Source: Raja brachyura (lineage: Eukaryota). Taken from it: DNA of 64,000 nt. Made by a program: the position numbers and the translations under genes. The stretch covers positions 39,866,001 through 39,930,000 of the forward strand of contig OY740791.1 of the NCBI GenBank assembly GCA_963514005.1, read 5' to 3'. This document shows positions 38,084-64,000 of this stretch, one piece after another; position 1 is the first letter of the stretch, and every line of letters begins with the position of its first letter. The notes beneath the pieces were generated by a model, which saw only the letters and a list, made by a program, of their open reading frames with translations, was not told where the DNA came from and made no database searches.

Positions 38084-40300
38084 CACGATGCGTGATGAAC
38101 GACGTGGGGTCACCAGTGTAGTGGCCTGGTCAAGGTCAGGAAACGACCGAACGCCAGGCAGATTCGAAAGGAGCTTTTTAATTCTTACCGCTCGAGAGCA
38201 CACAAGGACACCTTATCTCTAACCGCTCGAGAGCACACCAGGACACCCTTATCTCTACCCCTGGAGAGTCTCAACAGCAAACCCCGTAGCAGACCAACGC
38301 CCCTGTCCTTCCATCGGCGAGGGGGATGATCCAAGGAGTGGCCTACCCCCCAGGGACTGCCACACCTTACTGTTGATGAAACGCAGTGAGCAAACGTGAT
38401 AATTCACAATATTTTCAATTCCGATATATGCACGGCCAATGTTCGCCAAGCACTTTAGCTGTTGTTGTCCCTTCAGCTCTCGCTTCTCTTTACCTTCATT
38501 TCGCTTCACTTTTGGAATTCTGAAGTTGGGTACGTGTCTCTCACACTTACCCCAACTTCCACAATTTTTTACAGCGCAAAAATTCAACATTTTGGTGGTT
38601 TTTAACAGGTAGGAAAGTACGCGTTTCTTGTATTAATAACATATGCCGGAAGTTACGGATGTCCTCCAGATGCATTGAGCGGCTCCGTGCATCAAGCCCT
38701 ATGACCCAGTGACCTTACGTGCAACCCCACTATAATTTCAATCTTGATATCTGCACGGCCAATGTTCACCAACCTCTTTAGCTGTTGTTGTCCCTTCAGC
38801 TCTCCGTTCTCTCTACCGTCATTTCTCCTCACTTTTGGAATTCTGAAGTAGGATAAATGTCTCTCACAATTACCCTGATTTCCACAATTATTGACAATAA
38901 ATGACAATTTCAGCGGTTTATAACGGGTAAGAAAGTATGCGTTTCGTGTATTAACAGTATATGCCGCAAGTGTCCATGTACTCCACATGGATTGAGCTGC
39001 TCCGTGCGTCACGCCCTTTGACCCGATTACCTTACGTGCAACCCCCGCTATAGAGAGGTTTCATGGCAGTCGGGTCACAACCCAAGACCCGTACAGTTGC
39101 TACGCTACACTAAGTGGAGTACACGCGATGAACTGCAGGTAAGCACTTATCATTGTTTCCAGCGCAGTGGCCCGTTAAAACCCGCCGAAATTGTCAATTT
39201 TTGCGCTGTAAATAATTATGGAAATCGGGATAAGCATGAGAGACATTTAGCCTACTTCAGAATTCCAAAAGTGAGGAGAAATGACGGTAAATAGAAGCGA
39301 GAGCTGAAGGGACAACAACAACCAGAGTGCTCGGCAAACATTGGCCGTTTGCTCACTGCATTTCATCAACTAAGGCATTATTTGTGTTTTTTCTTGATTC
39401 CTTTAGCATCTAAAAAGTTTCAGAAGTGATACATCTGGCTGTAACATTTTAAAATCGCCCATGATTCTCGTGGGTTTTTAGATACAAAAAGAAAACGCCT
39501 ATGAAGCAAAATTTACAGCCAGATTTATCACTTCTGAGACTTTTTAGATACCAAAGGAATCAAGAAGAAACACAAATAATGCCTTACTGTTGATGAAATG
39601 CAGTGAGCAAACGCGATAATTCACAATATTTTCAATTCCGATATCTGCACGGCCAATGTTCGCCAAGCACTTTAGCTGTTGTTGTCCCTTCAGCTCTCGC
39701 TTCTCTTTACCTTCACTTCGCTTCATATTTGGAATTCTGAAGTTGGGTACTTGTCTCTCACGCTTACCCCGACTTCCATAATTTTTCACAGCGCAAAAAT
39801 TCAACATTTTGGCGGAATTTAACAGGTAGGAAAGTAAGTGTTTCTTGAATAAATAACAAATACCGGAAGTTACGGATGTCCTCCAGATGGATTGGAGGCT
39901 CCGTGCGTCAAGCCCAATGACCGAATGACCTCACGTGTAACCCCCCTATATGCCGGAAGCTGCCATGTACTCCACATGGATTGAGTTGCTCCATGCGTCA
40001 CTCCCTTTGACCCGATGAACTTACGTGCAACCCCCCCCCCCCCCCCCCCTCCCCATATCCCTGGAACCTGTCGATCTGCTCCCCGCTCTTCTGCACAAGA
40101 GGCAGCTCAACCCACTCGCATATTCTTCGAACCTGGGAGAAAACCAGAACACGAGGGGAAACTGGTGGAGAACCTGCGAACTCCACACAGGTGGCACTGG
40201 AGGTTCGGATCGCACCTGGGTCAGACAGCTGTGAGGAAACTTTGTCAACAGCAACATCGTTGCGACACCAGAAATGAGACAGAAATATTGAGCTGCTTAC

Positions 40301-40648
40301 CATCCAAAACCAGGAGATTCAAATTCACTTTCACATCATTAAACGGTCCAGGGATCTCCACACGGCAGCAATACCAGCCGCCGTCTTCTTTCCGGGGCTG
40401 CTTCATCGTGAGCGACACGTCTCCTTGCTCAATGTTACCACCAAGCTGATATTTCTCGGATCCTGCTGAAGTTACTGTTGCTCCGTTTGTTTTAATCAGT
40501 TCAGCTCTACAGCCCGAGTAAGGGCACTCTCCCCGACCCCAGCACATCGCAGTTTTACCATACTTTCGGACAGAGTAGTGGCACGGCAGAGTGATCGCCT
40601 GTCCCGGGTATCCTCGCACTGGTGATCCGGTGACAAGGGCCACTCGAC
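40301..40648 (-). CDS. IgV exon of a TIM/HAVCR-family receptor (TIM-1/TIM-4-like)
   Basis: Six-Cys TIM signature LPCHY...MCWGRGECPYSGC...GDVSLT...YCCRVEIPGPFND; acceptor ctgtttcag|GT and donor GAT G|gtaagc; 348 bp, phase 1 to 1, no stops. Confidence 0.95.
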
Positions 40649-42619
40649 CTGAAACAGTCCGGGAAAAGACAGTTATAGCCGGCGCTGAGTGATGAGATGG
40701 GAAGTGGCCACAGTGTGACAACCCGTCCCAGCGCTGAGAAAATGAGCCCGTTACCGCTGGCGGCAATTGGGAATATTGTGAAAGGGTTTCTATTTATCGG
40801 GATGTGCGTATTGCAGGCAGATCCAGTATTTACCCCCCAACCCCATTTTATCCCAGGGTAAGTGGTGGCGAGCGGCCGTCTCCAATCGCTGCATTTCTGT
40901 AGCAGCTTTGACACAACCGGTCGGCTTGTGAAGCAATTTCAGGGACGGACACGGGGACATATGGGACAGGGACTGACACACATTGTGTTCCCTGAATGAC
41001 TCATGGGAAGCAAATATTTTCCTCTCTTGACATTTTGTTCACATTTCATTTCATTCGATTCCAAACTCCCCGGGTAGGACCGGAACAAACAATTCGGACC
41101 ACAGCTCCAGCCTTTGGTCTATTTGTCGTTAACAAACCCATCGAGCTGCCAAAACCAGTGGAACAGATTCGGAGCCGAATATCCTCAATGCCGTCAGATC
41201 AGCGCCGACCTGAACTTCAACTCCAACCCCGTTAGTTCACCCCTCGCCCTTCTCAACTCCAGGGGATGGAGCCCGTCCTCACGATCAGACCCGGCATCAC
41301 TCGGTGACTCGGCTGGACCCCCTCGGGCCCCTCGGTTACGCACAGACAGACACATCTCACTTACTGCATTCCAGGGAGTTTGAATAACACGATTTGACAA
41401 AACAATTCAATTCCTGACTCGGAAACGTACCTAAAATAAGAGATACTACGATCAAATGAGCCACACCACCAGTAACAACCATCGCGCTGGAGTAACTCAG
41501 CGGGTCAGGCAGCTTCTCTGGAGAGAAGGAATAGGTGACGTTCCGGGTCGGGCCCCTTCTTCAGACTCGAAGGCACTGTCACGGCCGCTCTCTGACCTGT
41601 TGCTGGGCCACATCCTGTCCTGTGGCTGTTGCTTCCTACTCGACGAGGACACGAGTTTGCTTCGCAGTATTGTTAACCAACACCCCGGTGAATTGAGGCA
41701 AATTATATCAGCCACTCGGTTCCTGCTCTGGCGTTACATCAATGTCCAACGCGCATAAATTACAACCTCCTTCAGCGTTGCTGTCAGTTTAGATCCTCAG
41801 ATCACTGGTGACAAAATGCACCGAGCAGATCTCGTGTCTGTCCTGTGCAGTAGCAGCAGGAGAAGTGGAAATGTTGCCAAGTGCCGGACTGGCTGGGTCG
41901 CTGCTCCACCTGAGTCCTGGGATTTAGTGCCACTTTTCAATGTTTTATTTGTGAAGAGATGGCGATGAAATGGGGAGAAAGCGAGAGTCTCCGGGCATTT
42001 TGTGTCTCCGGGAGACTGAGATAGCATTTTCATAATCATACTTAATTAGCCAAGTATGTTTTGCAACATATGAGGAATTTCATTTGCCATATAGTCATAC
42101 CAATAAAAAGCAACAGAACACACAAAATACATTTTAACATAAACATCCACCACAGTGACTTCTCCACATTCCTCACTGTGATGGAAGGAGAAAAAAAGTT
42201 ACATTTCTTCCGCGTCTTTGGTCTTCCGCAGTCGGGGGCCTCAAGCCTACCGTTGACGGGATGATCTTGGCTCCCTTAGCCAGTGGTCGGGCCCTCCGCA
42301 TCGGGGCAATCAAGCTCCTGCATCGGGGGGGGGGGGGGGGGATCTCAGCTCCCCCGCGACGGGCGATCTGACCCCGGGTCGGGGCTGGTGTGAGCTCCTC
42401 GATGGTGAAATCTGCAGTTGGAGCGTCGATCCCAGGCAAGGGATTGGCTCCAATGGTAAGTCCACATCCCCGTCTGTTTCTATTATCATTCCATTATCAT
42501 TATCATTAACGGTTTCATTCTGCACACCCTGTACAACACTGGAGTCTCTAAACTGGAATAATGTGAGCCCCAAACCTGGTTTATCCTGGGCTGTTGTTAT
42601 AACCATGACATTAGAAGTG

Positions 42620-44400: not shown

Positions 44401-46259
44401 AATCTCTTGCAATTTAATACCACTCTCCAAACATAGCAAACATAACCCATCTCTGTGGATCCCTTCATTGACCTTGTAGCATCAGTTTTTGTACACTTCC
44501 AGGTTTTCTATATTTTATAAAATTACATACCTGCTGTAGGAGGACATTTTAGCTTTATACATGTACCCTGGATCTGGCTTTGCTTGGGACCTTGCTCAGA
44601 TAGAAGGAGAAACAAATAAAATATCTCCTAGTGGTAGTTCCTAAAATAATTTGGTTTCTTGAAAGCTTAATAGTGCACACTGGGAAACAATCTGAGAGAA
44701 TTCAAAATGTTTCAGTGATTCACAGCACTCACAGCATTTTTATTTTCTCATGACACAATGGTTACTTGTGGAAGCTATATTTTTGAAATAATTCATAATT
44801 GATCAATGTCTCAGTAACCTTTCATCTTTGTCTTTCCCCCGTTATCTTTAACCTTATGTTCCCTGCTATTTACAAAACCCCTCTCTCTTTTGTCTAACAA
44901 CCCCAATGTTTATTTTACCTAAACTAGCTGTGCTGTGGAACATAAACACCATGATAAATCTATTTATTGCCTCACTAACATCCTTAAGTTTAGTTTAGTT
45001 TAGCTTAGAGATGCAGCTCGGAAACAGACACTTCAGCCCACCAAGTCCGCACCGACAAGCAATCCCGCAAATTAACATTATCCTACACAATCTTGGGACA
45101 ATTTTACACATACACCAAGCCAATTAACCTACGTACCTGCAGGCCTGTACAAAGCTTTCCAAAAAGGGTGGTGGCATGACAGGATTACAAAAAATCTAAT
45201 GTGAAATAATGTGTGCGCTGCGCACATCACGAGTGCGAAGCGTGAAGTCCCTCGATGCCAGGGTCCAGGAACTGCTTTAAGGGCCCTGGAAGCTCTGGGA
45301 TTTTAGATGCTCCCAGATGCATTCTGAGCCTTATTTTGGAGCATTTTTGCACCAAATTTATGACCAATATTTCAGAAATTAACAGGAATCTGAGAGGTAG
45401 CTTTTTCACACAAAGGGTGCTGGGTGTATGGAACGAGCTGCCAGAGGAGGTAGTTAAGGCTGGGACTATCCTAATGTTTAAGAGACATTCAGACACATAC
45501 ATGGATAGGACAGATTTAGCTGCTGCCTTGGGTGATGCAGATCAGGACACAAGCTTTGGGACACGGTGTGAAGCTGTTGCCGTCTGTCCCAGCCTGGTAA
45601 AAACCTGGATGGAATGGATGTGGAGAGGATGTTTCCACTAGTGGGAGAGTCTAGGACCAGTGGCCACAGCCTCGGAATTAAAAGACATTCATTTAGGAAG
45701 GAGATGACCAGGAAATTCTTAAGTCAGAGGGTGGTGAACTGTGGAATTCATTGCCACAGACAGCTGTGGAGGTCAAGTCAATGGACATTTTTCAGGAGGA
45801 GATTGATAGATGCCAAGAAAGAATAGCTAGAATTGTGGCATGGTGCCAAATCATAATATTTTGGATTACACTTCACATGACTCTGATCAGGGAACATATT
45901 TTACAGGGAAGGTGATTGAGGAGACTTCTCCTGAATGGCATAATATCTGTAGAGAGCTGGCAGTGCTGTAACCATCCTGGTAAGTGGATAGAATTTTACT
46001 GCAATTCTGCTTTGGGACAAAGTGGAAAAGCCTGGGGTATCTGGGAATAAGTCCCAAATTACAATGCACTGGCTATTTCAAACTCTAGACCAGCAGGCGT
46101 ATCTAGGTCATCTTTCAGCTGCTTCTTCGCCTTTACATGTTCAGTCCACTAGCAAGGAAATGCTTTAAAAAGATCAGCGTTTAAGCTGCTAGCAAACATA
46201 GTTGTGGTGCAGCAGTCAAACACACACTTTCAGTGTGCAAAAGTAAGAACAGGTTGTAA

Positions 46260-46990
46260 TCTTATGAGTTGCAAGTTACTGAAATGTATTCTGAGGGATA
46301 GGATATACAGGCATTTGGATTGGCAAGGTATGATTGGGGATAGTCAGCATGGTTTTATACTTGGGAGGTCGTGTCTCACAAATCTGCTTGATTTTATTGA
46401 AGGCGTAACCAAAAAGGTTGATGAGGGCAGAGCTGTAGATGTTGTGTACATGAACTTCTGTTAGGTGTTCGACAAGGTTCCGCATGGTAGGCTGCTCTGG
46501 AAAGTTAGATCACATGGCATCCAAGGAGAGAAAATAGCAAATTGGCTCCATGTGAGGAAACAGAGGGTAATGGTGGAAGGTTGCTTCGCAGACTGGATGC
46601 CTGCGACTAGTGGTGTTCCTCAGGGATCGGTGCTGGGCCTGTTACTGTTTGTCATCTACATCAATGATTTGGATGAGAACATACAGGGCAAGATTAGCAA
46701 GTTTGCTGATGATACAAAAGTTAGTGGTTTTGCAGATAGTGAAGATGGTTGTAAACAATTGCAGCAGGATCTGGATCGATTGGCCAGGTGGGTGGAGGAA
46801 TGGTTGATGGAATTTAATACAGAGAAGTGTGAGGTGTTGCATTCTGGGACATCGTACAAAGACAGGGCCTAAACAGTAAATGGTAAACCTCTGGGTAGTG
46901 TTGTAGAGCAGGGAGATCTTGGAGTACAGGTGCATGGTTCCTTAAAGGTCGAGTCACAGGTAGATAAGGTAGTCAAAAAGGCTTTTGGCA
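46260..46990 (+). mobile_element. CR1 RT fragment
   Basis: SQHGF...SCLTNL, FDKVPHGRLL, GVPQGSVLG, KFADDTK in ORFs 46204-46872. Confidence 0.9.
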
Positions 46991-47089
46991 CTTCGGTCAA
47001 TGGGTACAATGACAACACTGACCCATTAGCTACCCTCTAACTTTTAATATACTTGTAGAATATTTTATGATTCTCCTTTATCTAGAATT

Positions 47090-47282
47090 TACTCAGATAT
47101 AGGAAAACATGGACTTATTAAAGATAGTCAGCAAGGGTTTCTTTGTGTGAGGTCCCTTCTCACAAATTTGATACCATGTTTTTTGAGGAGCTGACAAAGA
47201 TGATTGATGAGGATAGGGCAATGGATGTTGTCTGCATCTACATTGGCCCTCATGGTAGGCTGATCCAAAAGATGAAGGCATA
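47090..47282 (+). mobile_element. Left half of a CR1 fragment split by the Helitron composite
   Basis: Ends HGRLIQKMKA-TA and continues in frame at 54841. Confidence 0.85.
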
Positions 47283-49449
47283 CTAGACCAAGTGCAGACC
47301 CGTTGGGTCTGTTCCCCCATCGCATGGTTGCGAGGGGAGGGTGCGGCCTGAGGCGTCATACACACACTAACCAACCTCACACACACACACACACTAAGCA
47401 CCCCCCCCCACACACACGCACACACACACTAACCACCCCATTGATGTTATATTAATATTATTAATTCACTCCTTTTACCCCATGCCCTGCCCTATCCACT
47501 CACACATAGCCCCCAATTCGCAGGCACGGAGAGGGAGACACGGAGGCACAGAGAGGGACACGGAGGCACACAGAGAGGGACACGGAGGCACACAGAGAGG
47601 GACACGGAGGCACACAGAGAGGGACACGGAGGCACACAGAGAGGGACACGGAGGCAGAGAGGGACACGGAGGCACACAGAGAGGGACACGGAGGCACACA
47701 GAGAGGGACACGGAGGCACACAGAGAGGGACACGGAGGCACACAGAGAGGGACACGGAGGCACACAGAGAGGGACACGGAGGCACACAGAGAGGGACACG
47801 GAGGCACACAGAGAGGGACACGGAGGCACACAGAGAGGGACACGGAGGCACACAGAGAGGGACACGGAGGCACACAGAGAGGGACACGGAGGCACACAGA
47901 GAGGGACACGGAGGCACACAGAGAGGGACACGGAGGCACACAGAGAGGGACACGGAGGCACACAGAGAGGGACACGGAGGCACACAGAGAGGGACACGGA
48001 GGCACACAGAGAGGGACACGGAGGCACACAGAGAGGGACACGGAGGCACACAGAGAGGGACACGGAGGCACACAGAGAGGGACACGGAGGCACACAGAGA
48101 GGGACACGGAGGCACACAGAGAGGGACACGGAGGCACACAGAGAGGGACACGGAGGCACACAGAGAGGGACACGGAGGCACACAGAGAGGGACACGGAGG
48201 CACACAGAGAGGGACACGGAGGCACACAGAGAGGGACACGGAGGCACACAGAGAGGGACACGGAGGCACACAGAGAGGGACACGGAGGCACACAGAGAGG
48301 GACACGGAGGCACACAGAGAGGGACACGGAGGCACACAGAGAGGGACACGGAGGCACACAGAGAGGGACACGGAGGCACACAGAGAGGGACACGGAGGCA
48401 CACAGAGAGGGACACGGAGGCACACAGAGAGGGACACGGAGGCACACAGAGAGGGACACGGAGGCACACAGAGAGGGACACGGAGGCACACAGAGAGGGA
48501 CACGGAGGCACACAGAGAGGGACACGGAGGCACACAGAGAGGGACACGGAGGCACACAGAGAGGGACACGGAGGCACACAGAGAGGGACAAGGAGGCACA
48601 CAGAGAGGGACACGGAGGCACACAGAGAGGGACACGGAGGCACACAGAGAGGGACACGGAGGCACACAGAGAGGGACACGGAGGCACACAGAGAGGGACA
48701 CGGAGGCACACAGAGAGGGACACGGAGGCACACAGAGAGGGACACGGAGGCACACAGAGAGGGACACGGAGAAGGGAGGGGGAAGAAGGGAGGGAGGAGA
48801 GGGGCCCAGCAGCCTTCGGCCTCAGAGTGAGCCTCAGCGCCGTGGCCTCGCATCATCGGCACTTCAGACCCCGAGTATGGGGGGGAGGGGTGGAGTGGGC
48901 GGGTGGGCATGATCCCGAGTGAGCCTGCGGGCCGGCAGCGAGAACGGCGAAAAGCAGCGGGGGAACCAGCCGATCTCTGGCTTCCGCCAGCGTGTATGGG
49001 GAGAGGAGGGGGGCGGTGGAGGAGTGCCGGGCGGCAGCAGGCGTTACCGTCGCGCGGGGCACGGGCGGGTCCAGCTGTGGGAGGAGTGGCGCAAGCGTAC
49101 TTGGAGCCAGAGGGGAGGGGGAGAGTGGAGGAGAGCCGGGCTGTCAAATGAAGAGAAAGGGAGAAGCGGCTTGGATTGGTCGCCATTTGGGCATTGTGAT
49201 GTCAGCAGCTGGTAAGAGCCGTTTAGATTTTAAAACTTGAGTTTTGTTTGAGTTTTGTGATCAATTGTACTCAAAATCTGAGGAAATAATTGACCAAGGA
49301 GTGGGTATGCAAATGTAACAGTAAAATCGCGAGCGAAATGGTAATAATCTCAGTGTTTTTGCGTCTGGTTTTCGCGGAGTAATGAATCAAAGGCAAAATC
49401 AAAGGCAAAATGACATACACACACACACAGAGTTGTAAAATTATATAGA
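47283..49449 (-). mobile_element. Non-autonomous Helitron H1, providing the 3' end of the composite
   Basis: 3' CTAG|T at 47283-47286; hairpin cagacccgttgggtctg at 47295-47311; 5' A|TC at 49449. Confidence 0.85.
47525..48770. repeat. 22-bp minisatellite (cacggaggcacacagagaggga)n, about 56 copies
   Basis: Directly visible near-perfect array inside H1. Confidence 0.98.
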
Positions 49450-49540
49450 TATATATCTCTATCTATCTATCTGTCTCAATATATATATTATATGTGCGTG
49501 TGTGTAGGAAGGAATATATATATATATATATATATATAGA

Positions 49541-51379
49541 CTAGACTAAGTGGGACCCATTGGGTCCCATGTTCACACGGGGGAGAGCTGGTGACCTTAC
49601 GCAATATTCCACCTCTCCATCAATTCCACTATTGGTAGCCAGTTGGGGGGGGGGGGGCGCTTTCTGGAGTGCCAGTATGGGAATTATCGGCTGAAGGGAC
49701 TGGTTTCCAGAGGGCTAATATGGATATTGTGGGCCAAATGAATTCTTGGGGTGGCAGCTCAGTCAATCAAGCCTGATGTGCTGGCAGCTCACTCACGGCT
49801 GGGATGGCTGGCAGTTGACTCACGGCTATTCCTTGAAATTCCATTTCAAACAGGGTGCAAGGCCACCAAATTCAAGCACAGTTTCATGCCACTTCATGCA
49901 AGATGTAATGTCACCAAATATAAGTGCAGTTTCATGCCACTTCAAGCAGGGTGCAAGGCCACCAAATTCAAGTGCAGTTTCGTACCACTTCAAGCAGGGT
50001 GCAGGGCCACCAAATTCAAGTGCAGTTTCATGCCACTTCAAGAAGGGTTCAAGGCCACTAAATTCAAGTGCAGTTTCATACCATTTCATGCAGGATGCAA
50101 CCACCATAAAACCACCATAAAACCACACAAAAGACCACATAAACACCACACTCACAGTTCAGTAGACATTCAGTGTGTTCAGAACATTCACAGCTCAGAC
50201 AAAGTCGTGACCTCTCCCTCCTTCACCCTGCAGAGACTGAGCCACACCCACACTTCCGGGTTTTATAATCCCCCTCCCACCAGAAGGGGCATGGACTTCA
50301 TGGCATGACTGACAGGACAGAGATTCTCAATATTTTTAAAACTCCAATAACACTTTTATTTTTCATTGATGGGAAGAATCATCTGCACCTGATGAACGGA
50401 GGGGGACTGAGTAAGTTGGCCAAAAATCACAGCCGTAAGTGGTAGCGTTTTATCTAAAATCAATATACAAACAGGAAGTTGTCAAGTTTAGACTTTTAAT
50501 CATGCTTTATTTCAAACCAACTACCACCAACAACTATTTGCAGTGTTTTATTTCAATCCCACCACTACCAACAACGATTTGCAGTGCTTTATTTCAAACC
50601 AACCATCACCAACACCCATTTGCTGTGCTTTATTTCAAAACAACCACCACCAACAACCATTTGTTGTGCTTTATTTCAAACCAACCACCACCAACAACCA
50701 TTTGCAGTGCTTTTTTTTCAAACCAACCACCACCAACAACCGTCTGCAGTGCTTTATTTCAAACAACCACCACCAACAACCATTTGCAGTGCTTTATTTC
50801 AAACCAACCACCACCAACGACCATTTGTAGTGCTTTATTTCAAACCAACCACCACCAACGGCCGTTTGCAGTGCTTTATTTCAAACCAACCACCACCAAC
50901 AACCATTTGCAGTGCTTCATTTCAAACCAACCGCCACCAACAATCATTTCCGGTGCTTTATTTCAAACCAACCACATTTTCATTTTCAAACCACATTAAG
51001 GGCACTCAAGGTCAGTAAAACCACACTCACAGTTTAGTAGACATGTGTTCAGTGTTATTCACAGCTCAGACTGAGAGACGTGACCATCTCCCCCCCCCCC
51101 CCCCCCCCCCATCTTGCAGAGACTGACTGAGGCACTCAACATTTCTGGGTTTATTGTCCCTCCGGAAGGGGCATGGCCTTCAGGAGAGAGAATCTCCACA
51201 TTTATTAAACACCAATAACTCTTTTATTTTGCATCAATGGGAAAAATCCTCTTGGCCTGCGCAGCGGAGGGGGACTCTGAGTAAGATGGCCAAAAATCAC
51301 AGCCATAAGTGGCAGCGTTTTTTCCAAAATCAATATACAGAACAGGAAGTGGTCAAAATCCGACTTTTAGTAATATAGA
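49541..51379 (-). mobile_element. Non-autonomous Helitron H2 with internal 48-bp and 41-bp tandem repeats
   Basis: CTAG at 49541; hairpin tgggacccattgggtccca at 49551-49569; 5' TC at 51379; arrays at about 49845-50100 and 50505-50975; diverged internal duplication about 50140-50500 versus 51020-51370. Confidence 0.85.
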
Positions 51380-51558
51380 TAACTAATACTAAAAATCTAT
51401 ATATATATATAATGATATTATATATACAATTTTAGTTTTAATGCAATATTTGAGTGTATATATATATATTTATATTTCACTAAACAATATATTATATATA
51501 TTAGATATTAGATGATCATATCATTATATTATATAGATTATATATTTCATATGATATA

Positions 51559-51590
<32 letters not shown>

Positions 51591-52264
51591 TGCACTCAAA
51601 AATACATACAAACTAAAACATACATAAATTAGAAATACATAAATTAGATCAGCTCATAACCATAAACCTGTAAGCATTAACCTATGGAGATTTATAGTAA
51701 GCATCTTACAATGTTGCACAAACAATATTTGTTTATCATGAGGGCTTTCATGACAAGGATGAATATAACTATGTAAATAATTAAATACCGTATAGTAAAC
51801 AATAAAAGGAATGGGAGATAATTAATATGGAGCAGCTGTTGAGTGGAAAAGTTAGAGGGTTTGTGAGGAAAAAATACTACATTAAAGCTAGGATTAAAAC
51901 TTGAACTTATTTAGGCATATAAAGTATATAAGGCTCACTATATAGCTGTGGTGAATGTCTCAGATACACATCCTGATCTGCTCGTGGGGTTGTCAATAAA
52001 GTGTGTCTGTCCAGTTACTTTATCTATGACACATTATATAAGTAAGTATTGAATTAAGAGAAAAAACAGTCCATTGGATTTTACTCCATGAACTGCAAGG
52101 TAACCTGGGAAGTACAGCTTTGTTAATATCTGCTCAGAGAAATGTGACCCCTAAAATACATTATCATGATAATTTTATAGCTTCCCCAAATAATAATCTT
52201 CATACAATATATGGAACGATTCATCATGCAATTATTTGGATGCTTGAAATGGTTGCAGACATAC

Positions 52265-52621
52265 CTGTAAATATAACAGTGATGTTTGTTTTATTTGCTT
52301 TATTGATGTTAACAATCTCTGCAACTGAAAGCAGTTCACAACCATATGTTCCAGATTCATTCTTCTTCAGTTGCTGAATTGACATTGTCGCTATGTTCGT
52401 GTCAAGGTCCCATAACAATTGGATTTGGTCATTAGCAGATATGTTGCTGGTCTTTAAACGGATTTCTCCAACCTTGGTTGGATTCCCCAATGTATACTTG
52501 TACCACACCAGGCCCATGTCATCAGTGAAATGTCCTTTTGATAGCTCACAGTAGATGGTAGCTGATTCCCCATAGTTCTTCATGATGGTTGGTGGGTACT
52601 GCGACAGTGCAAGAGAGTCAC
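52265..52621 (-). CDS. Isolated IgV exon, PD-1 (PDCD1)/CD28-family-like
   Basis: GESATIYC...LVWYKYTLGNPTKVGEI...MSIQQLKKNESGTYGCELLSVAEIVNINKANKTNITV parallels remembered human PD-1 (GDNATFTC...LNWYRMSPSNQTDKLAAF...ARRNDSGTYLCGAISLAPKAQIKES). Acceptor tttttattggtag|GT, donor ACA G|gtatgt; 357 bp, phase 1 to 1. The IgV call is firm; the PD-1 assignment is by eye. Confidence 0.7.
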
Positions 52622-53419
52622 CTACCAATAAAAACAACAGATAGTGGGATGAGGAAGATTATTGTCTTTTTACGGTTCATAAATGTGGTCAGTCAGCAGT
52701 CAAGCCAAATGAATTAATTTCATGCCATTCAACCTTAAAGAATAAATTAATTATCGAAATGAACCAAAATTGTATGGGTGGTTACCAGTAACCATTCTCC
52801 ACTCTCTAACTCATAAAGCAGGATAGTTCACGACTTCTGACTTCAATCGATTAAATTGATCTCTGCTGTAGTGTCCTTTTTCTAGAAATCGAATACAATG
52901 AAAGCGCTCAAGAAGATGGATATTGCTAGATAATCATATACTTATTCAAATTCTGATCTTGTTAGTGTGTTTAGATGGTTGTCTTTACATCTTTGCGGTA
53001 ATGATTACATTTTTACATATTCCGGTTGACATTTTTCTTGTCGAGGCCGGGATCACCTAATCTGAACATTTCATGCTTTATTTCTCCACATTACTGATTA
53101 AAGTTTTAAAACATCAAAAGACTTTGAAATTAAAAGCACCAGGTTCAAATGATGACGTCACAATGGCTCAGCTAGCAGAGACCACCCTGAATGAAATTTC
53201 ATCCAATATTTAACACGTTATTCGCGATTATATAGCTTTAAAAATGCCAACTTTCACAAGATCTTTACATATTCTGATTCACCTTTTTCCCCTCGTGGCC
53301 AAGATCACTTTCACTGCACATTTTATGCTGTATACCTGTATTAAATGCACGTGCGTTATTCCAAAAATGAATAAATCAAACATGCGTAACCTGTGAAGTG
53401 CATCCACTGGACATCTATG

Positions 53420-53719
53420 CCAAAAGTAAAAAGTTCTGAAAATACAGTTCACAGTTTCGCCAGCGAAATAAGAAAAATGGCGGCGTTTTTGGAGGAGACT
53501 GGGCGGCAGCAGCCGTTATGGTGGCTGGCCAGCAGGAGGCCACAAAATAAATGAGTGTCGGGGGGGGGGGGGGGGGGGGAGGATTTTATTTTAAAATGTG
53601 TACATAAAAATGTCTAAATGTAATGAGGAGTGCATTAGTGAATGTAAAAGTATAATGTCTAGCGAAATGGAAACATTTTGGTGGACCATGAAATCAAAGG
53701 GCAAAAATCTGACACACAT

Positions 53720-53754
<35 letters not shown>

Positions 53755-53766
53755 TTTAAAAGTATA
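53420..53766 (-). mobile_element. 5' fragment of a Helitron of the H1/H3 family
   Basis: Shares aaaatgtctaaatgtaatgaggag, agcgaaatgga, atcaaagg and (ca)n-attttaaa with about 54650-54835. Confidence 0.7.
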
Positions 53767-54840
53767 CTAGACCAAGTCTGTTCCCCCAATGCGCGTATGC
53801 GGGGTTGGGGGCATGCGGCGTGACACACACTAACCACCTACACACTAACTACCCCCTTGATATTATATTAATATTATTAATTAGATCCTTTTATTCCATA
53901 ACCGCCCTAGTCACTGACGCATAGCCCCCAACTCGCAGGAGTGTCTAGAGAGGGAGAGGGGGGTAGAGAGTGAGGGCAGAGAGAGAATGGGAAGAGACAG
54001 TGAGAGAGGCAAAGACAGGTAGGGGGAGGTGGGGGTGAAGGGAGGGTGTGGAGGGGATGGGGCAGGGGAGAGAGGGTGAGAGGGGTAGGGGGAGAGAGGG
54101 GGAAGAGTGGGAGGGAGGGAGGGGGAAAGGGGTGGGGCCAGTCCATCTATTCCCCACTCACTTTCACCCCCACTCCTCTCCCTCTATTCCCACACTCTCC
54201 CTGCTCACCTCCCCCATTCGCCCCTCTCCCTCCCTACTCCCTCCTCTCCCCCAATCCCCCGACTTCCCCTCTTCACCTCCCCAGGATCAAGCCTTACCCC
54301 GCCCGCCCGTCACCTTATTTCATCTCCCGATCTGCAGAGCATGCCGGCGTGAGAGCGGAACTGACGCTTTATCTCTCCTCCCAATCGGCAGAGCATTTTG
54401 TGAACGGGGGGGGGGGGGGGGGGGTTTGAGCGGGCGCGCGCGTGGGCGATTCCAGCCAAAGGAATCTTTGATTCCAGCTGCGGGAGGCGCGAGTGCAGTT
54501 GGAGGGGTAAGGGAGGGGAGGAGCCGGGCTGGCAGACAAATGAAGAGAGAGAAGCGGCTTGGGATTGGTCGGCATGTGTGATTGGGACGTAAGCAACTCG
54601 TGAGGTGCCGTTTCGATTTTAAATTGAGTGAGTGTGTGATTTTATGTACATAAAATATGTACATAAAAATGTCTAAATGTAATGAGGAGTAAATCCATGC
54701 ACGTAGAAGCGAAATCGCTAGCGAAATGGAAAAAATAACGGCGTTTTCGCGGACCATGGAATCAAAGGCCAAAGATCTTATCTGAAAAAAAATGGAATGT
54801 GACATACACCCACACACACAGAATTTTAAACGTATATAGA
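53767..54840 (-). mobile_element. Non-autonomous Helitron H3, providing the 5' end of the composite; 3' hairpin deleted
   Basis: ctagaccaagtctgttcccc versus H1 ctagaccaagtgcagacccgttgggtctgttcccc; 5' TC at 54840 flanked by A on the minus strand. Confidence 0.82.
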
Positions 54841-55080
54841 TGGGATCCACAGAGACTCGGTAGATTGGATTCAAAATTGGCTTATCCATAGAAGACAGAA
54901 TGTAGTGGTGGAGGAGTGTTATTCTGACTGGAGGTGTGTGACCAGCAGTGTTCCAGAGGGGTCGGTGCTGTGAGCTCTGTTAATTGTGATATATATAAAA
55001 TATATATATGATTTGGATTTGGATGAAAACGTAGGTAGGCTGGCAAACAACATAACAATTGGTGGAGTTACAGAAAGTAT
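54841..55080 (+). mobile_element. Right half of the split CR1 fragment
   Basis: (Y)GIHRDSVDWIQNWLIHRRQNVVVEECYSDWRCVTSSVPEGSVL. Confidence 0.88.
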
Positions 55081-55147
55081 ACAAAGGCAAACCTATACTT
55101 GCTCCACTTGTCTGTGTTTGGCCCACATTATTCTGAACCATTTTTAT

Positions 55148-55745
55148 AAAGTCAAGTCAAACAAACTTTATTGTCATTTAGAAATACATTGATATATGCA
55201 GTTCCAAACGAAATTACGTTGCATTTGGCTCCCTGTGCAACACAATAAATTAACCGAAGGATAGGCATGGATGAAAAGGATAAATAGACAATGGTGGCAG
55301 CCCATTACATGGCATTCAGGAGTCTGATGGCTCGTGGGAAGAAGCTGTTGCGGAACCTTGATGTTCTGCTCCTTATGCTGCGGTATCTTTTTCCCGAGGA
55401 CAGCAGAGTGAACAGTCCGTGATGGAGATGTGTGGGGTCCTTTATAATACTGCTGGCCTTAGACACACAGCGTTTGGTCGCAATATCCCCGATTGAGGGG
55501 AGAGAGGTCCCGATGATTTTTTCCGCTGTCCTCACCACTCTCTGCACAGACTTCCAGTCGGAGGCTCTACAGTCCCCAAACCAGACAGAGATACAGCTGG
55601 TCAGAATACTCTCTATGGTGCCCCTGTAGAAAGTAGTGAGGATGGGATGGGGGAGATGAGCTCTTCTCATCCGGCGCAGAAAGTGCAACCGCTGCTGCGC
55701 TCTCTTAACAGTTGATGAGATGTTATTCGACCAGGTCAGACTGTT
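55148..55745 (-). mobile_element. Rex1/Babar-type LINE 3' end
   Basis: ORF 55305-55688: FLRRMRR...FYRGTIESILTSCISVWFG...NSFFPRAIRLLN; (aagtc)n tail. Confidence 0.85.
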
Positions 55746-55764
55746 AGTGATCTGTTAGTGATCT

Positions 55765-56800
55765 AAAATGGTACAGCACAGGAACAGGCCCTTTGGCCCA
55801 AATGATTGTGCCAAACATGATGCCCAGTTAAACTGATCTCATCTGCCTGTACATGATCCATATCCCTCAATTCCCTGCACTTCCATATGCCTATCTAAAA
55901 GCCTCTCATATGCCATTATCATATCTGCCTCCACCACCTGCCCTGGCAATGCTTTTCAGGTCCCAACCACTCTCTGTTTAAAAAACCTTGCCCTGTACTT
56001 CTCCATTAAACTTTACACCTCTCATCTTATAGCTATGTCTTCTAGTCTTGGACATTTCCACCCTGGGAAAAAAAATTCTGACTGTCTACCCTAGCTATGT
56101 TTTTCATAATTTTATATAATTCAAACAAGTCTCCCCTCAACCTTTGACATTCCAGAGAAAACAATCCAAGCCTATCCAACCATTCCCTGCATCTGAAACC
56201 CTCTAATCCAGGCAGCATTCTGGTAAACCTACTCCACACCCTCTCCAAAGCCTTGACATCTTCCAATAATGCATGATCAGAACTGCCACATTACTCCATA
56301 TGTGGCCTAACCAAGATCCTACAGAGCTACATCATGACCACCTGACTCTTATATTCAATGCCCCTAACAATGAAGGGAAGCATACCATACACCTTCTTCA
56401 CCACCCTATCTACGTGTGCTGCTATCTTCAGTGAGCTATGAACTTGGACTCCAAGATCCCTCTGCACATCAATGCTGTTAAGGATCTTGCCTTTAACTGT
56501 AGTCTCTCCTGACATTCAACCTCCCAAAGTGCAACACTTCGCACACGCTCAGGTTTAAATCCATCAGCCATTTCTGCAACTAATCTATATCCCACTGTAT
56601 CTTCTCACAGCATTCCTCACTGTTTGCAACTCCTCCAATTTTGCTGTCATCAGCAAACTTACATCTAGGTCATTGATATATATCACAAACTGCAGAGGTC
56701 CCAGCTGAGATCTCTATACAAGACCACTGGTGTCAGACCTCCAGCCAAAATATCTACCTTCCGCCACAATAATTTTCTATGAATAAGCTAGTTCTGAATG
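55765..56800 (-). mobile_element. Old CR1 fragment shared with duplicate copy A
   Basis: QRDLGVQVHSSLK and FTRMLPGL motifs; homologous to 28700-28850 plus 29948-30400. Confidence 0.8.
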
Positions 56801-58975: not shown

Positions 58976-59269
58976 AGATAATAATCCATTGGATTGTAGT
59001 TACTGATGTGCACTCGTTATAAAAGTCAAAACAGGGTAGGAGTAAGCATTTTATTTTGGATTGGAAGCCTGTTGGTGGTTTGTGCAATGGGTCTGCCAGG
59101 ACAGTGCAGCTGGTTGATCTCGGGGAAGCACTGGAAGTGGAACTGTGTGTGATGACGGGACTAGAAGCTGTCCAAGAGTAAGAGGATGTAGGCGAGGCAC
59201 TAAATGCTAACTTTGCATCTGTATTCATCAAGTAGAAGGACATGGAGGATATTGGTCTATGACTTATGA

Positions 59270-59500
59270 AAACGGAAACACGAGGGGAAACCGAGGCAAT
59301 GAACTCCACGCAGGCGGCACTGGTCAGGATCGAACCTGAATCACTGCAGCTGTGAGGAAACTGCGAACAGCAACATTTTGTTACGACGCCAAGATTGATA
59401 CAGAAATATGTAACATTGAGCTGTCCACAGTCCAAATTCACTTTCACATCTTGAGACAGTCTAAAGGTCTCCACATGGTAACAAAACTAGCCAAGTCTTT
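59270..59500 (-). pseudogene. Second copy of the decayed TIM IgV remnant
   Basis: G*FCYHVETFRLSQDVKVNLD; paralogous to 31500-31732. Confidence 0.85.
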
Positions 59501-62906: not shown

Positions 62907-64000
62907 TGCTCCCCGCTCTTCGACACAAGAGGCAGCTTAACCCACTCGCATCTTCGAACCTGGGAGAAAACCAGAACACGAGGGGAAACTGGTGGAGAAC
63001 CTGCGAACTCCACGCAGGTGGCACTGGCGGGTGGGATCGAACCTGGGTGACTACAGCTGTGAGGAAACTGCCGGGTATCCTCGCACTGGTGATCCGGTGA
63101 CAAGGGCCACTCGACCTGAAACAGTCCGGGAAAAGACAGTTATAGCCGGCGCTGAGTGATGAGATGGGGAGAGGCCACAGTGTGACAACCCGTCCCAGCG
63201 CTGAGAAAATGAGCCCGTTACCGCATGCGGCAATTGGGAATATAGTGAAAGGGTTTCTATTTATCGGGATGTGCGTATTGCAGGCAGATCCAGTATTTAC
63301 CCCCCAACCCCATTTTATCCCAGGGTAAGTGGTGGCGAGCGGCCGTCTCCAATCGCTGCATTTCTGTAGCAGCTTTGACACAACCGGTCGGCTTGTGAAG
63401 CAATTTCAGGGACGGACACGGGGACATATGGGACAGGGACTGACACACATTGTGTTCCCTGAATGACTCCTGGGAAGCAAATATTTTCGTCTCTTGACAT
63501 TTTGTTCACATTTCATTTCATTCGATTCCAAACTCCCCGGGTAGGACCGGAACAAACAATTCGGGTCACAGCTCCAGCCTTTGGTCTATTTGTCGTTAAC
63601 AAACCCATTGAGCTGACAAAACCAGTGGAACAGATTCGGAGCCGAATATCCTCAATGCCGTCAGATCAGCGCCGACCTGAACTTCAACTCCAACCCCGTT
63701 AGTTCACCCCTCGACCTTCTCAACTCCAGGGGACGGAGCCCGTCCTCGCGATCAGACCCGGCATCACTCGGTGACTCGGCTGGACCCCCTCGGGCCCCTC
63801 GGTTACGCACAGACAGACACATCTCACTTACTGCATTCCAGGGATTTTAAATAACACGATTTGACAAAACAATTCAATTCCTGACTCGGAAACGTACCTA
63901 AAATAAGAGATACTACGATCAAATGAGCCACACCGCCAGTAACAACCATCGCGCTGGACACTGTAGTGCTGGAGTAACTCAGCGGGTCAGGCAGCATTTC
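62907..64000 (-). pseudogene. TIM paralog (copy B) with most of the IgV exon deleted
   Basis: Near-identical to 40078-41520 but lacking about 40241-40603; junction gtgaggaaactg|ccgggtatcc; only the acceptor and GRVALVTGSPVRGYP remain. Confidence 0.92.

What the first reader, a model, noticed from the sequence alone, without database searches (positions are those of the whole stretch)
47283..54840. Composite Helitron carrying a PD-1-like IgV exon, inserted precisely into a CR1 LINE
Seen: removing 47283-54840 restores a continuous CR1 RT frame (AAG GCA TA|T GGG ATC, HGRLIQKMKAYGIHRDSVDWIQNWL) with no target duplication or loss. On the minus strand the 7,558-bp insert reads A|TC...hairpin-CTAG|T. 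Between its Helitron modules lies about 1.8 kb of non-repeat-looking DNA (about 51600-53400) holding an intact IgV exon with both splice sites but no evident leader or TM exon. Established: Helitrons insert at A|T without a TSD and capture gene fragments. Inference: an immune checkpoint-like exon was moved from another locus into the TIM cluster by rolling-circle transposition, or by recombination between Helitron copies.
Basis: partly seen in the sequence, partly recalled or inferred. Interest (0 to 1): 0.92.

Follow-up and report, generated by a model that had tools for sequence, protein, structure and literature searches.

The report
Helitron stack carrying PD-1 exon
In a skate genome, rolling-circle transposons (Helitrons) copied the ligand-binding exon of the immune checkpoint gene PD-1 and placed it inside an old LINE element in the TIM gene cluster: a clear natural case of transposon exon shuffling, most likely with no function.

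Summary
Removing 47283-54840 rejoins a CR1-like reverse-transcriptase frame exactly at A|T, with no duplication or loss.

On the minus strand the insert is a head-to-tail stack of non-autonomous Helitrons, named here D, C, B and A:
- D (54840-53767) has lost its terminator hairpin through a 15-nt deletion.
- C is a truncated 5' module.
- B and A are complete, with 5'-TC, a hairpin and CTAG-3'.

Between C and B lies about 1.35 kb of low-copy DNA with one intact, splice-competent, phase 1-1 IgV exon (52621-52265). This exon is PD-1 exon 2 in the strict sense: 81% identical to thorny skate PD-1, 80-86% to two other skates. No other PD-1 exon is in the window.

PD-1 and TIM genes lie on different chromosomes in eight other cartilaginous fishes, so the exon was imported.

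Contigs from public runs show the exon block is low-copy while the Helitron modules are highly repeated. They hint at a second, more ancestral copy in the likely source species.

The best reading is Helitron read-through capture, a known mechanism. Unresolved: one event or serial stacking, the donor locus, the junctions in reads, and expression. Only about 1.35 kb, not 1.8 kb, is non-repeat.

This is a new member of a known kind, of moderate interest.

The parts
46267..47282 (+). Left half of the interrupted CR1-like LINE (RT region); the last base is the A of the A|T target
   Evidence: The frame continues across the join; tblastx to other CR1-like copies
47283..49449 (-). Helitron A (non-autonomous): 5'-TC at 49449, 57 copies of a 22-bp satellite (47522-48771), hairpin plus CTAG-3' at 47283. 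This is the terminator used at the outer 3' end
   Evidence: 5' and 3' homology to D
49450..49540 (.). TA-rich spacer between the 5' end of A and the 3' end of B
   Evidence: homology of A to D stops at 49449/49450
49541..51379 (-). Helitron B: 5'-TC at 51379, 48-bp and 41-bp internal satellites, intact 8-bp-stem hairpin plus CTAG-3' at 49541. Flanked by A and T. Very high copy in related genomes
   Evidence: depth
51380..51599 (.). AT-rich low-complexity stretch, probably part of the imported intron
   Evidence: contigs of other species end here
51600..52960 (-). Low-copy imported block: about 340 bp of PD-1 intron 1, exon 2, and about 665 bp of intron 2
   Evidence: Single-copy-like contig depth. 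Single colinear contigs of 1329 and 1408 nt in two other organisms at about 93-94% identity
52265..52621 (-). PD-1 exon 2 (IgV domain): 357 nt, phase 1-1, AG acceptor at 52623-52622, GT donor at 52264-52263, no stop codon
52961..53400 (.). Mid-copy repeat of two diverged ~250-nt units. Either the body of Helitron C or a repeat native to PD-1 intron 1
   Evidence: Depth 100-1000 times the single-copy level; units aligned; direct repeat D10
53401..53766 (-). Helitron C 5' module. Compared with D it lacks the first four bases (TCTA). It directly abuts the CTAG of D
53767..54840 (-). Helitron D, the lead element: 5'-TC at 54840 next to host A, CTAG-3' at 53767, with a 15-nt deletion that removes the terminator hairpin. 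Its interior is a long purine/pyrimidine palindrome
54841..55250 (+). Right half of the interrupted CR1-like LINE; the first base is the T of the A|T target

Best explanation
A non-autonomous Helitron sat in intron 1 of the PD-1 gene, on another chromosome. It had lost the hairpin that tells the RepHel transposase where to stop. Transposition began at its 5'-TC and ran through the dead 3' end into host DNA: the rest of intron 1, exon 2 and part of intron 2. It ended further downstream. The copied strand was pasted between an A and a T inside a CR1-like LINE, which lies in a degenerate copy of a TIM gene. The result is a 7.56-kb head-to-tail Helitron stack (D, C, PD-1 fragment, B, A) with one intact PD-1 IgV exon on the same strand as the TIM genes.

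Shown: the exact A|T insertion, the Helitron termini, the missing hairpin, the PD-1 identity of the exon, its lone-exon status, its low copy number, and the fact that PD-1 is foreign to TIM clusters.

Inferred: the donor locus, the read-through itself, and whether the stack arrived in one event ending at A's terminator or was built by successive insertions at the same host A|T. The exon is most likely an unused passenger.
For: - Exact rejoining of the RT frame, ungapped against an independent LINE copy.
- 5'-TC and CTAG-3' ends. The 10-mer CTTRGTCTAG occurs exactly three times in 64 kb, all on the minus strand at the three Helitron 3' ends.
- Hairpins fold in A (-6.7 kcal/mol) and B (-8.6 kcal/mol) but not in D, which has a 15-nt deletion relative to A.
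- Experiments with Helraiser showed that deleting the hairpin increases 3' bypass and transduction of flanking DNA, and that natural bat Helitrons abut each other head to tail (PMC4778049).
- The exon is 81% identical to Amblyraja radiata PD-1, 80% to Rhinoraja, 86% to a Logan skate fragment and 50-62% to rays and sharks. Those proteins carry the PD-1 ITIM/ITSM tail. XP_032887962 is accepted as skate PD-1 (PMC12151841).
- No other PD-1 exon is in the window.
- PD-1 and TIM proteins map to contigs of different length in 8 cartilaginous fishes.
- The Helitron modules are 10^3-10^5 times deeper than the exon block in four runs. The exon block is single-copy-like.
- Organism A has pieces identical to the window, plus one piece (52467-52672) with 9 substitutions and 6 gap letters. 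At five listed sites that piece carries the letters of the other species, and these restore the residues of other skates' PD-1 (T4, N30). This looks like a second, donor-like copy.
Against:
- B has an intact hairpin and a CTAG closely related to A's. A single read-through from D to A would therefore also have had to pass a good terminator, unless B inserted later.
- One single-copy-depth contig in each of two other organisms joins a B-like 5' end to the right CR1 flank (joint 51382->54850, shorter side only 25 nt). If this is the orthologous locus, the stack was built in steps and the PD-1-bearing unit ends at 51380 without a CTRR end.
- The 'second copy' in organism A could instead be a divergent haplotype.
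- The exon shows no faster protein change than real PD-1 exons (4 unique replacements against 2, 8 and 2), so decay is not demonstrated.
Confidence: 0.7

Rival explanations
1. Serial stacking in place. An older Helitron (A, then B with a short TA-rich transduced tail) sat in the CR1. Later the hairpin-less D/C unit, carrying the PD-1 fragment as a 3' transduction with a de novo end at 51380, landed in the A|T formed by the host A and the first T of B. The exon still arrives by Helitron capture; only the number of events differs.
For: - B keeps a working-looking terminator.
- The joint 51382->54850 occurs at single-copy depth in two other organisms.
- Bat Helitrons are known to insert right next to resident ones, and hairpin-less ones make de novo 3' ends (PMC4778049).
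Against: - The joint rests on a 25-nt side at 85% likeness, with unknown letters between the two sides.
- It requires three hits at one dinucleotide.
- The contig sequence could not be read.
Confidence: 0.3
2. Ectopic recombination or long-tract gene conversion. A single D/A-type Helitron already in the CR1 recombined with D- and A-type Helitrons flanking PD-1 exon 2, copying the interval without transposition.
For: A and D belong to one family and bracket the insert. The final product would be indistinguishable from a transposition.
Against: - A and D are only about 67-82% alike in their shared parts, which is poor substrate for recombination.
- The hairpin deletion in D gives a direct mechanistic reason for read-through instead.
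Confidence: 0.08
3. The exon is in use here. It is spliced into transcripts starting at the intact leader exon of the degenerate TIM copy (63997-63896) and/or running into the downstream TIM gene, giving a chimeric or decoy PD-1-V protein.
For: - Same strand as the TIM genes.
- Phase 1-1 exon with good AG and GT sites.
- The upstream TIM copy has an intact leader but has lost its own IgV exon.
- The open frame is kept, with no excess of replacements.
Against: - No RNA run holds the stretch.
- A replacement sits at the V-domain hallmark Asp (D88E), and a Cys shared by three skates is lost.
- The exon lies inside repeats 11 kb from the leader.
Confidence: 0.05
4. Assembly chimera: repeats caused a PD-1-locus segment to be stitched into a CR1 of the TIM region.
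For: Both sides of the exon block are high-copy repeats at which short-read contigs break. No junction read was seen.
Against: Both outer junctions are exact Helitron ends at one A|T of a continuous codon. A mis-join would not produce this.
Confidence: 0.04

Closest known systems
Helitron gene capture by 3'-end bypass (read-through/transduction), as shown with Helraiser and seen in Myotis Helibat and maize Helitrons
   Same: 5'-TC/CTAG-3' termini, a subterminal hairpin terminator, A|T insertion without TSD, a lead element lacking the hairpin, host DNA carried downstream of it, and Helitrons abutting head to tail
   Different: The host is a skate (cartilaginous fish). The cargo is a complete internal coding exon with both splice sites from an immune checkpoint receptor, not a promoter or first exon. 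The stack contains up to four Helitron units and may have been built in steps
PD-1 (PDCD1) of cartilaginous fishes, e.g. Amblyraja radiata XP_032887962
   Same: The IgV exon is 81% identical, with the same exon phases and V-domain hallmarks (Cys pair, Trp, G-x-Y-x-C)
   Different: Only exon 2 is present. There is no leader, stalk/TM, ITIM or ITSM exon. It has D88E at the hallmark Asp and lacks the extra Cys shared by the other skates. It lies in the TIM cluster rather than in the conserved PD-1 neighbourhood
HelibatN3 / NUBPL-type chimeric transcripts from captured fragments
   Same: A captured gene piece with a splice site is placed near or within other genes and could be spliced into them
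   Different: No transcript evidence here. The cargo has both an acceptor and a donor, so it would act as a cassette exon rather than a new first exon

Membership tests
Canonical Helitron (non-autonomous) | 5' terminus TC and 3' terminus CTRR | tested here: met
   A, B and D start with TC and end with CTAG on the minus strand. CTTRGTCTAG matches exactly only at 47283, 49541 and 53767. C lacks its first four bases.
Canonical Helitron (non-autonomous) | Hairpin about 6-12 nt upstream of the 3' end | tested here: met
   A has a 7-bp stem (-6.7 kcal/mol) and B an 8-bp stem (-8.6 kcal/mol). D has lost its hairpin through a 15-nt deletion.
Canonical Helitron (non-autonomous) | Insertion between host A and T without target-site duplication | tested here: met
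   The CR1 codon TA|T is rejoined exactly, with an ungapped alignment to another copy. B is also flanked by A and T.
Canonical Helitron (non-autonomous) | Repeated family mobilised by a RepHel-encoding partner | tested here: inconclusive
   The modules are 10^3-10^5 times deeper than single-copy DNA in contigs of four runs. No RepHel ORF is in the window, and the genome could not be searched.
Helitron read-through gene capture | Donor locus where the same Helitron lies just upstream of the captured DNA | not testable with these tools
The only indirect hints are a second version in organisms A and B, and contigs of other species that end at the same repeat borders.
Helitron read-through gene capture | Defective terminator in the element that leads the captured DNA | tested here: met
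   15-nt hairpin deletion in D. C has no recognisable 3' end before the PD-1 block.
PD-1 (PDCD1) gene | IgV domain closest to PD-1 orthologues | tested here: met
   81%, 80% and 86% identity to skate PD-1 and 50-62% to other elasmobranch PD-1. The next families are at or below 32%.
PD-1 (PDCD1) gene | Leader, transmembrane and ITIM/ITSM cytoplasmic exons in the same locus | tested here: not met
   tblastn of two full skate PD-1 proteins finds only exon 2 in the 64 kb. This is a gene fragment, not a PD-1 gene.
TIM (HAVCR/TIMD4) cluster as the host locus | TIM-type IgV, leader, mucin and TM exons around the insert | tested here: met
   Copy 1 exons lie at 41512-41429, 40649-40302, 31021-30935, 15521-15456 and 6770-6654. 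Copy 2 has its leader at 63997-63896. Identity to skate TIMD4-like/HAVCR1 is 83-91%.
CR1 LINE as the target | Non-LTR reverse transcriptase; assignment to the CR1 clade | tested here: inconclusive
   Pfam RVT_1 on paralogous copies and RT motifs across the join. Clade assignment (CR1 versus L2) was not tested.

The most novel reading that the evidence does not exclude
The imported PD-1 IgV exon is exonised. Transcripts from the intact leader exon of the IgV-less TIM copy (63997-63896) would splice into it and on to downstream TIM exons. All junctions are phase 1, so the frame is kept. The product would be a PD-1-V/TIM chimeric or decoy receptor: domain shuffling between two checkpoint families, caught at birth and driven by a Helitron.
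Probability: 0.05. Interest if true: 0.85.

Novelty: new member of a known kind. Interest (0 to 1): 0.42.

Why it matters
Immunoglobulin-superfamily receptors are thought to have diversified by shuffling phase 1-1 domain exons, but the vehicle is rarely visible. Here the vehicle is visible: a rolling-circle transposon with a broken stop signal moved the ligand-binding exon of one checkpoint receptor (PD-1) into the cluster of another (TIM). It landed in the same orientation, with both splice sites intact, in a lineage that holds the oldest known PD-1 genes.

The finding also shows that Helitrons have been very active in skates and capture host exons there; other first-stage notes on this genome report further cases. 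The mechanism itself is already established in bats and maize, and the exon is probably inert, so the value is as a clean natural example and a testable lead rather than a new principle.

Tried and rejected
It was redone from the session files.
- Search for a local donor: no second copy of the exon, of the 2-kb block or of any Helitron module elsewhere in the 64 kb.
- 'The exon block belongs to an amplified Helitron family': rejected, because its contig depth is single-copy-like while the modules are thousands of times deeper.
- 'PD-1 lives natively next to TIM in cartilaginous fish': rejected, because the genes lie on different chromosome-size contigs in eight species.
- Accelerated decay of the captured exon: not supported.
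- Rfam scan of 46000-56500: only sub-threshold miRNA-like hits, caused by the long palindrome inside D.
- RNA evidence: no listed run is on record as RNA and none holds more than 0.30 of the sampled words.
- Scan findings by sequence: blank, which means nothing.
Only the single exon was searched, by reference.
Full report
**1. The observation**

The + strand reads ...GCATA|CTAGACC... at 47282/47283 and ...TATATAGA|TGGGATCC... at 54840/54841. Joining 47282 to 54841 gives one open reverse-transcriptase frame across the join. A tblastx alignment of the joined sequence to an independent LINE copy at 8283-8119 runs through the join without a gap. The adjacent copy at 46465-46872 has the same motif order and scores as Pfam RVT_1. 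The 7,558-bp insert therefore sits between the A and T of one codon, with nothing duplicated or lost. This part of the finding is confirmed.

**2. Anatomy of the insert on the minus strand, 5' to 3'**

| Unit | Coordinates | Features |
|---|---|---|
| D | 54840-53767 | 5'-TC next to host A; ends in CTAG |
| C | 53766 to about 53400 | 5' module homologous to D's 5' end; lacks the first four bases; abuts D's CTAG directly |
| Mid-copy repeat | 53400-52960 | two ~250-nt units |
| Low-copy block | 52960-51600 | holds the IgV exon |
| AT-rich stretch | 51599-51380 | low complexity |
| B | 51379-49541 | TC...hairpin...CTAG; flanked by A and T; 48- and 41-bp satellites |
| TA-rich spacer | 49540-49450 | 91 bp |
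| A | 49449-47283 | TC...57 copies of a 22-bp satellite...hairpin...CTAG\|T |

- A and D share both end regions (67-82% identity). B is a different family, but its last 30 nt are closely related to A's.
- The 10-mer CTTRGTCTAG occurs exactly three times in the window, all on the minus strand at these three 3' ends.
- As single-stranded DNA, A's and B's subterminal hairpins fold at -6.7 and -8.6 kcal/mol. D has a 15-nt deletion that removes the hairpin. Another first-stage note (s1-880973) said the same, and this was verified here.
- No copy of any module lies elsewhere in the 64 kb.

**3. The exon**

- The exon spans 52621-52265 on the minus strand. It is 357 nt, with an AG acceptor, a GTATGT donor, phase 1 at both ends and no stop codon. 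It scores as Pfam V-set at 4e-8.
- An exhaustive HMMER search gave three strong hits, all uncharacterised proteins of cartilaginous fishes with a PD-1-type tail.
- A search with the basking-shark protein recovered the family in 16 species. Against these, the exon is 81% identical to Amblyraja radiata 'programmed cell death protein 1', 80% to Rhinoraja, 58-63% to rays and 50-58% to sharks. A Logan-derived skate fragment is 86% identical.
- A 2025 paper accepts the Amblyraja protein as PD-1 and lists the V-domain hallmark residues (PMC12151841).
- The window's host is therefore a skate, and the exon is PD-1 exon 2.
- tblastn with two complete skate PD-1 proteins finds only this exon in the window.
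- Compared with three skates, the window copy has four unique replacements: N30H, C36G, I48T and D88E. D88E falls on the hallmark Asp of the D-x-G-x-Y-x-C motif. The other sequences have 2, 8 and 2 unique replacements, so decay is not evident.

**4. The host locus**

- A TIM gene (copy 1) runs on the minus strand. Its leader is at 41512-41429, its IgV exon at 40649-40302, and further exons extend down to 6654.
- A tandem second copy has an intact leader at 63997-63896. It has lost all but the first 45 nt of its IgV exon through a 362-nt deletion, and its mucin exon was not found.
- The Helitron stack lies between the two leaders, on the same strand.
- PD-1 and TIM proteins of eight other cartilaginous fishes lie on contigs of different, chromosome-scale lengths. 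The PD-1 neighbourhood is conserved from shark to human. The exon is therefore foreign to this locus.

**5. Public reads**

No run held more than 0.30 of the sampled words, and all runs were served as contigs. They were laid on 51100-55400 at 85% likeness.

- Depth: 51600-52830 has single-copy-like depth. 52830-53400 is 100-1000 times deeper, and the Helitron parts are 10^3-10^5 times deeper.
- Organisms C and D: each has one contig (1329 and 1408 nt) colinear with 51600-52990 at about 93-94% identity. Each contig ends exactly where the repeats begin.
- Organism A: three pieces are identical to the window. One piece (52467-52672) has 9 substitutions and 6 gap letters. At five listed sites it carries the letters of the other species, and translated these restore residues of other skates' PD-1. 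This fits a second, donor-like copy in the likely source species, though a divergent haplotype is not excluded.
- Organism B: two versions are present over parts of the block.
- Unexplained joint: one contig in each of organisms B and D, at single-copy depth, joins a B-like 5' end (up to 51382) to the right CR1 flank (from 54850). The shorter side is only 25 nt and the letters between are unknown. If this is the orthologous locus, the stack was built in steps.

**6. Mechanism**

- Helraiser experiments show that the 3' hairpin is the terminator. Deleting it increases bypass and transduction of downstream DNA. De novo 3' ends then arise, and natural bat Helitrons often abut each other head to tail (PMC4778049).
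- The hairpin-less D, followed by a terminator-less C and then by PD-1 intron-exon-intron DNA, is the expected product of such a read-through at the PD-1 locus.
- Two variants fit the data: a single event ending at A's terminator, with B inserted later or bypassed; or serial insertions at the host A|T. Recombination between Helitron copies is less likely, given 67-82% identity between A and D.
- An assembly chimera is unlikely, because both outer junctions are exact Helitron ends within one codon.

**7. Verdict**

The mechanism is a known one, so this is a new member of a known kind, found in an unusual host with notable cargo and destination. The exon is most likely an inert passenger. A small chance remains that it is spliced into TIM-locus transcripts.

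Not done: donor locus, orthologous empty site, junction-spanning reads and RNA evidence.

Noticed in passing
window 62907-63116 compared with 40077-40649: The upstream tandem TIM copy keeps an intact leader exon (63997-63896). It has lost 362 nt that cover all but the first 45 nt of its IgV exon, together with the splice donor. Its mucin exon was not found either. It is probably a pseudogene.
   Followed up: partly
window 51382 / 54850 (contigs of runs X2 and X8): In two other organisms, one contig each at single-copy depth joins a B-like Helitron 5' end to the right CR1 flank, skipping 3,467 bp. This may be an orthologous intermediate state without the PD-1 block.
   Followed up: partly
window 53940-54300: Helitron D contains a long imperfect palindrome: a purine-rich arm followed by its pyrimidine-rich complement. 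It draws many sub-threshold plant-miRNA-like Rfam hits.
   Followed up: no
window 33337-38364: A Gypsy-like LTR retrotransposon, with 763-bp LTRs 98.7% identical and long pol ORFs, is inserted in an intron of TIM copy 1. A DIRS-like element with a tyrosine recombinase ORF lies at about 20.5-25.2 kb.
   Followed up: no
window 31662-31724 and 59268-59492: Degenerate remnants of a further TIM-type IgV exon (with a stop codon inside the G-W-Y-C-C motif) lie in both tandem copies. This points to an older internal duplication.
   Followed up: no
window 47522-48771: Helitron A carries 57 copies of a 22-bp satellite at 98% identity. This is much more homogeneous than the rest of the element, so the array expanded or was homogenised recently.
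   Followed up: no
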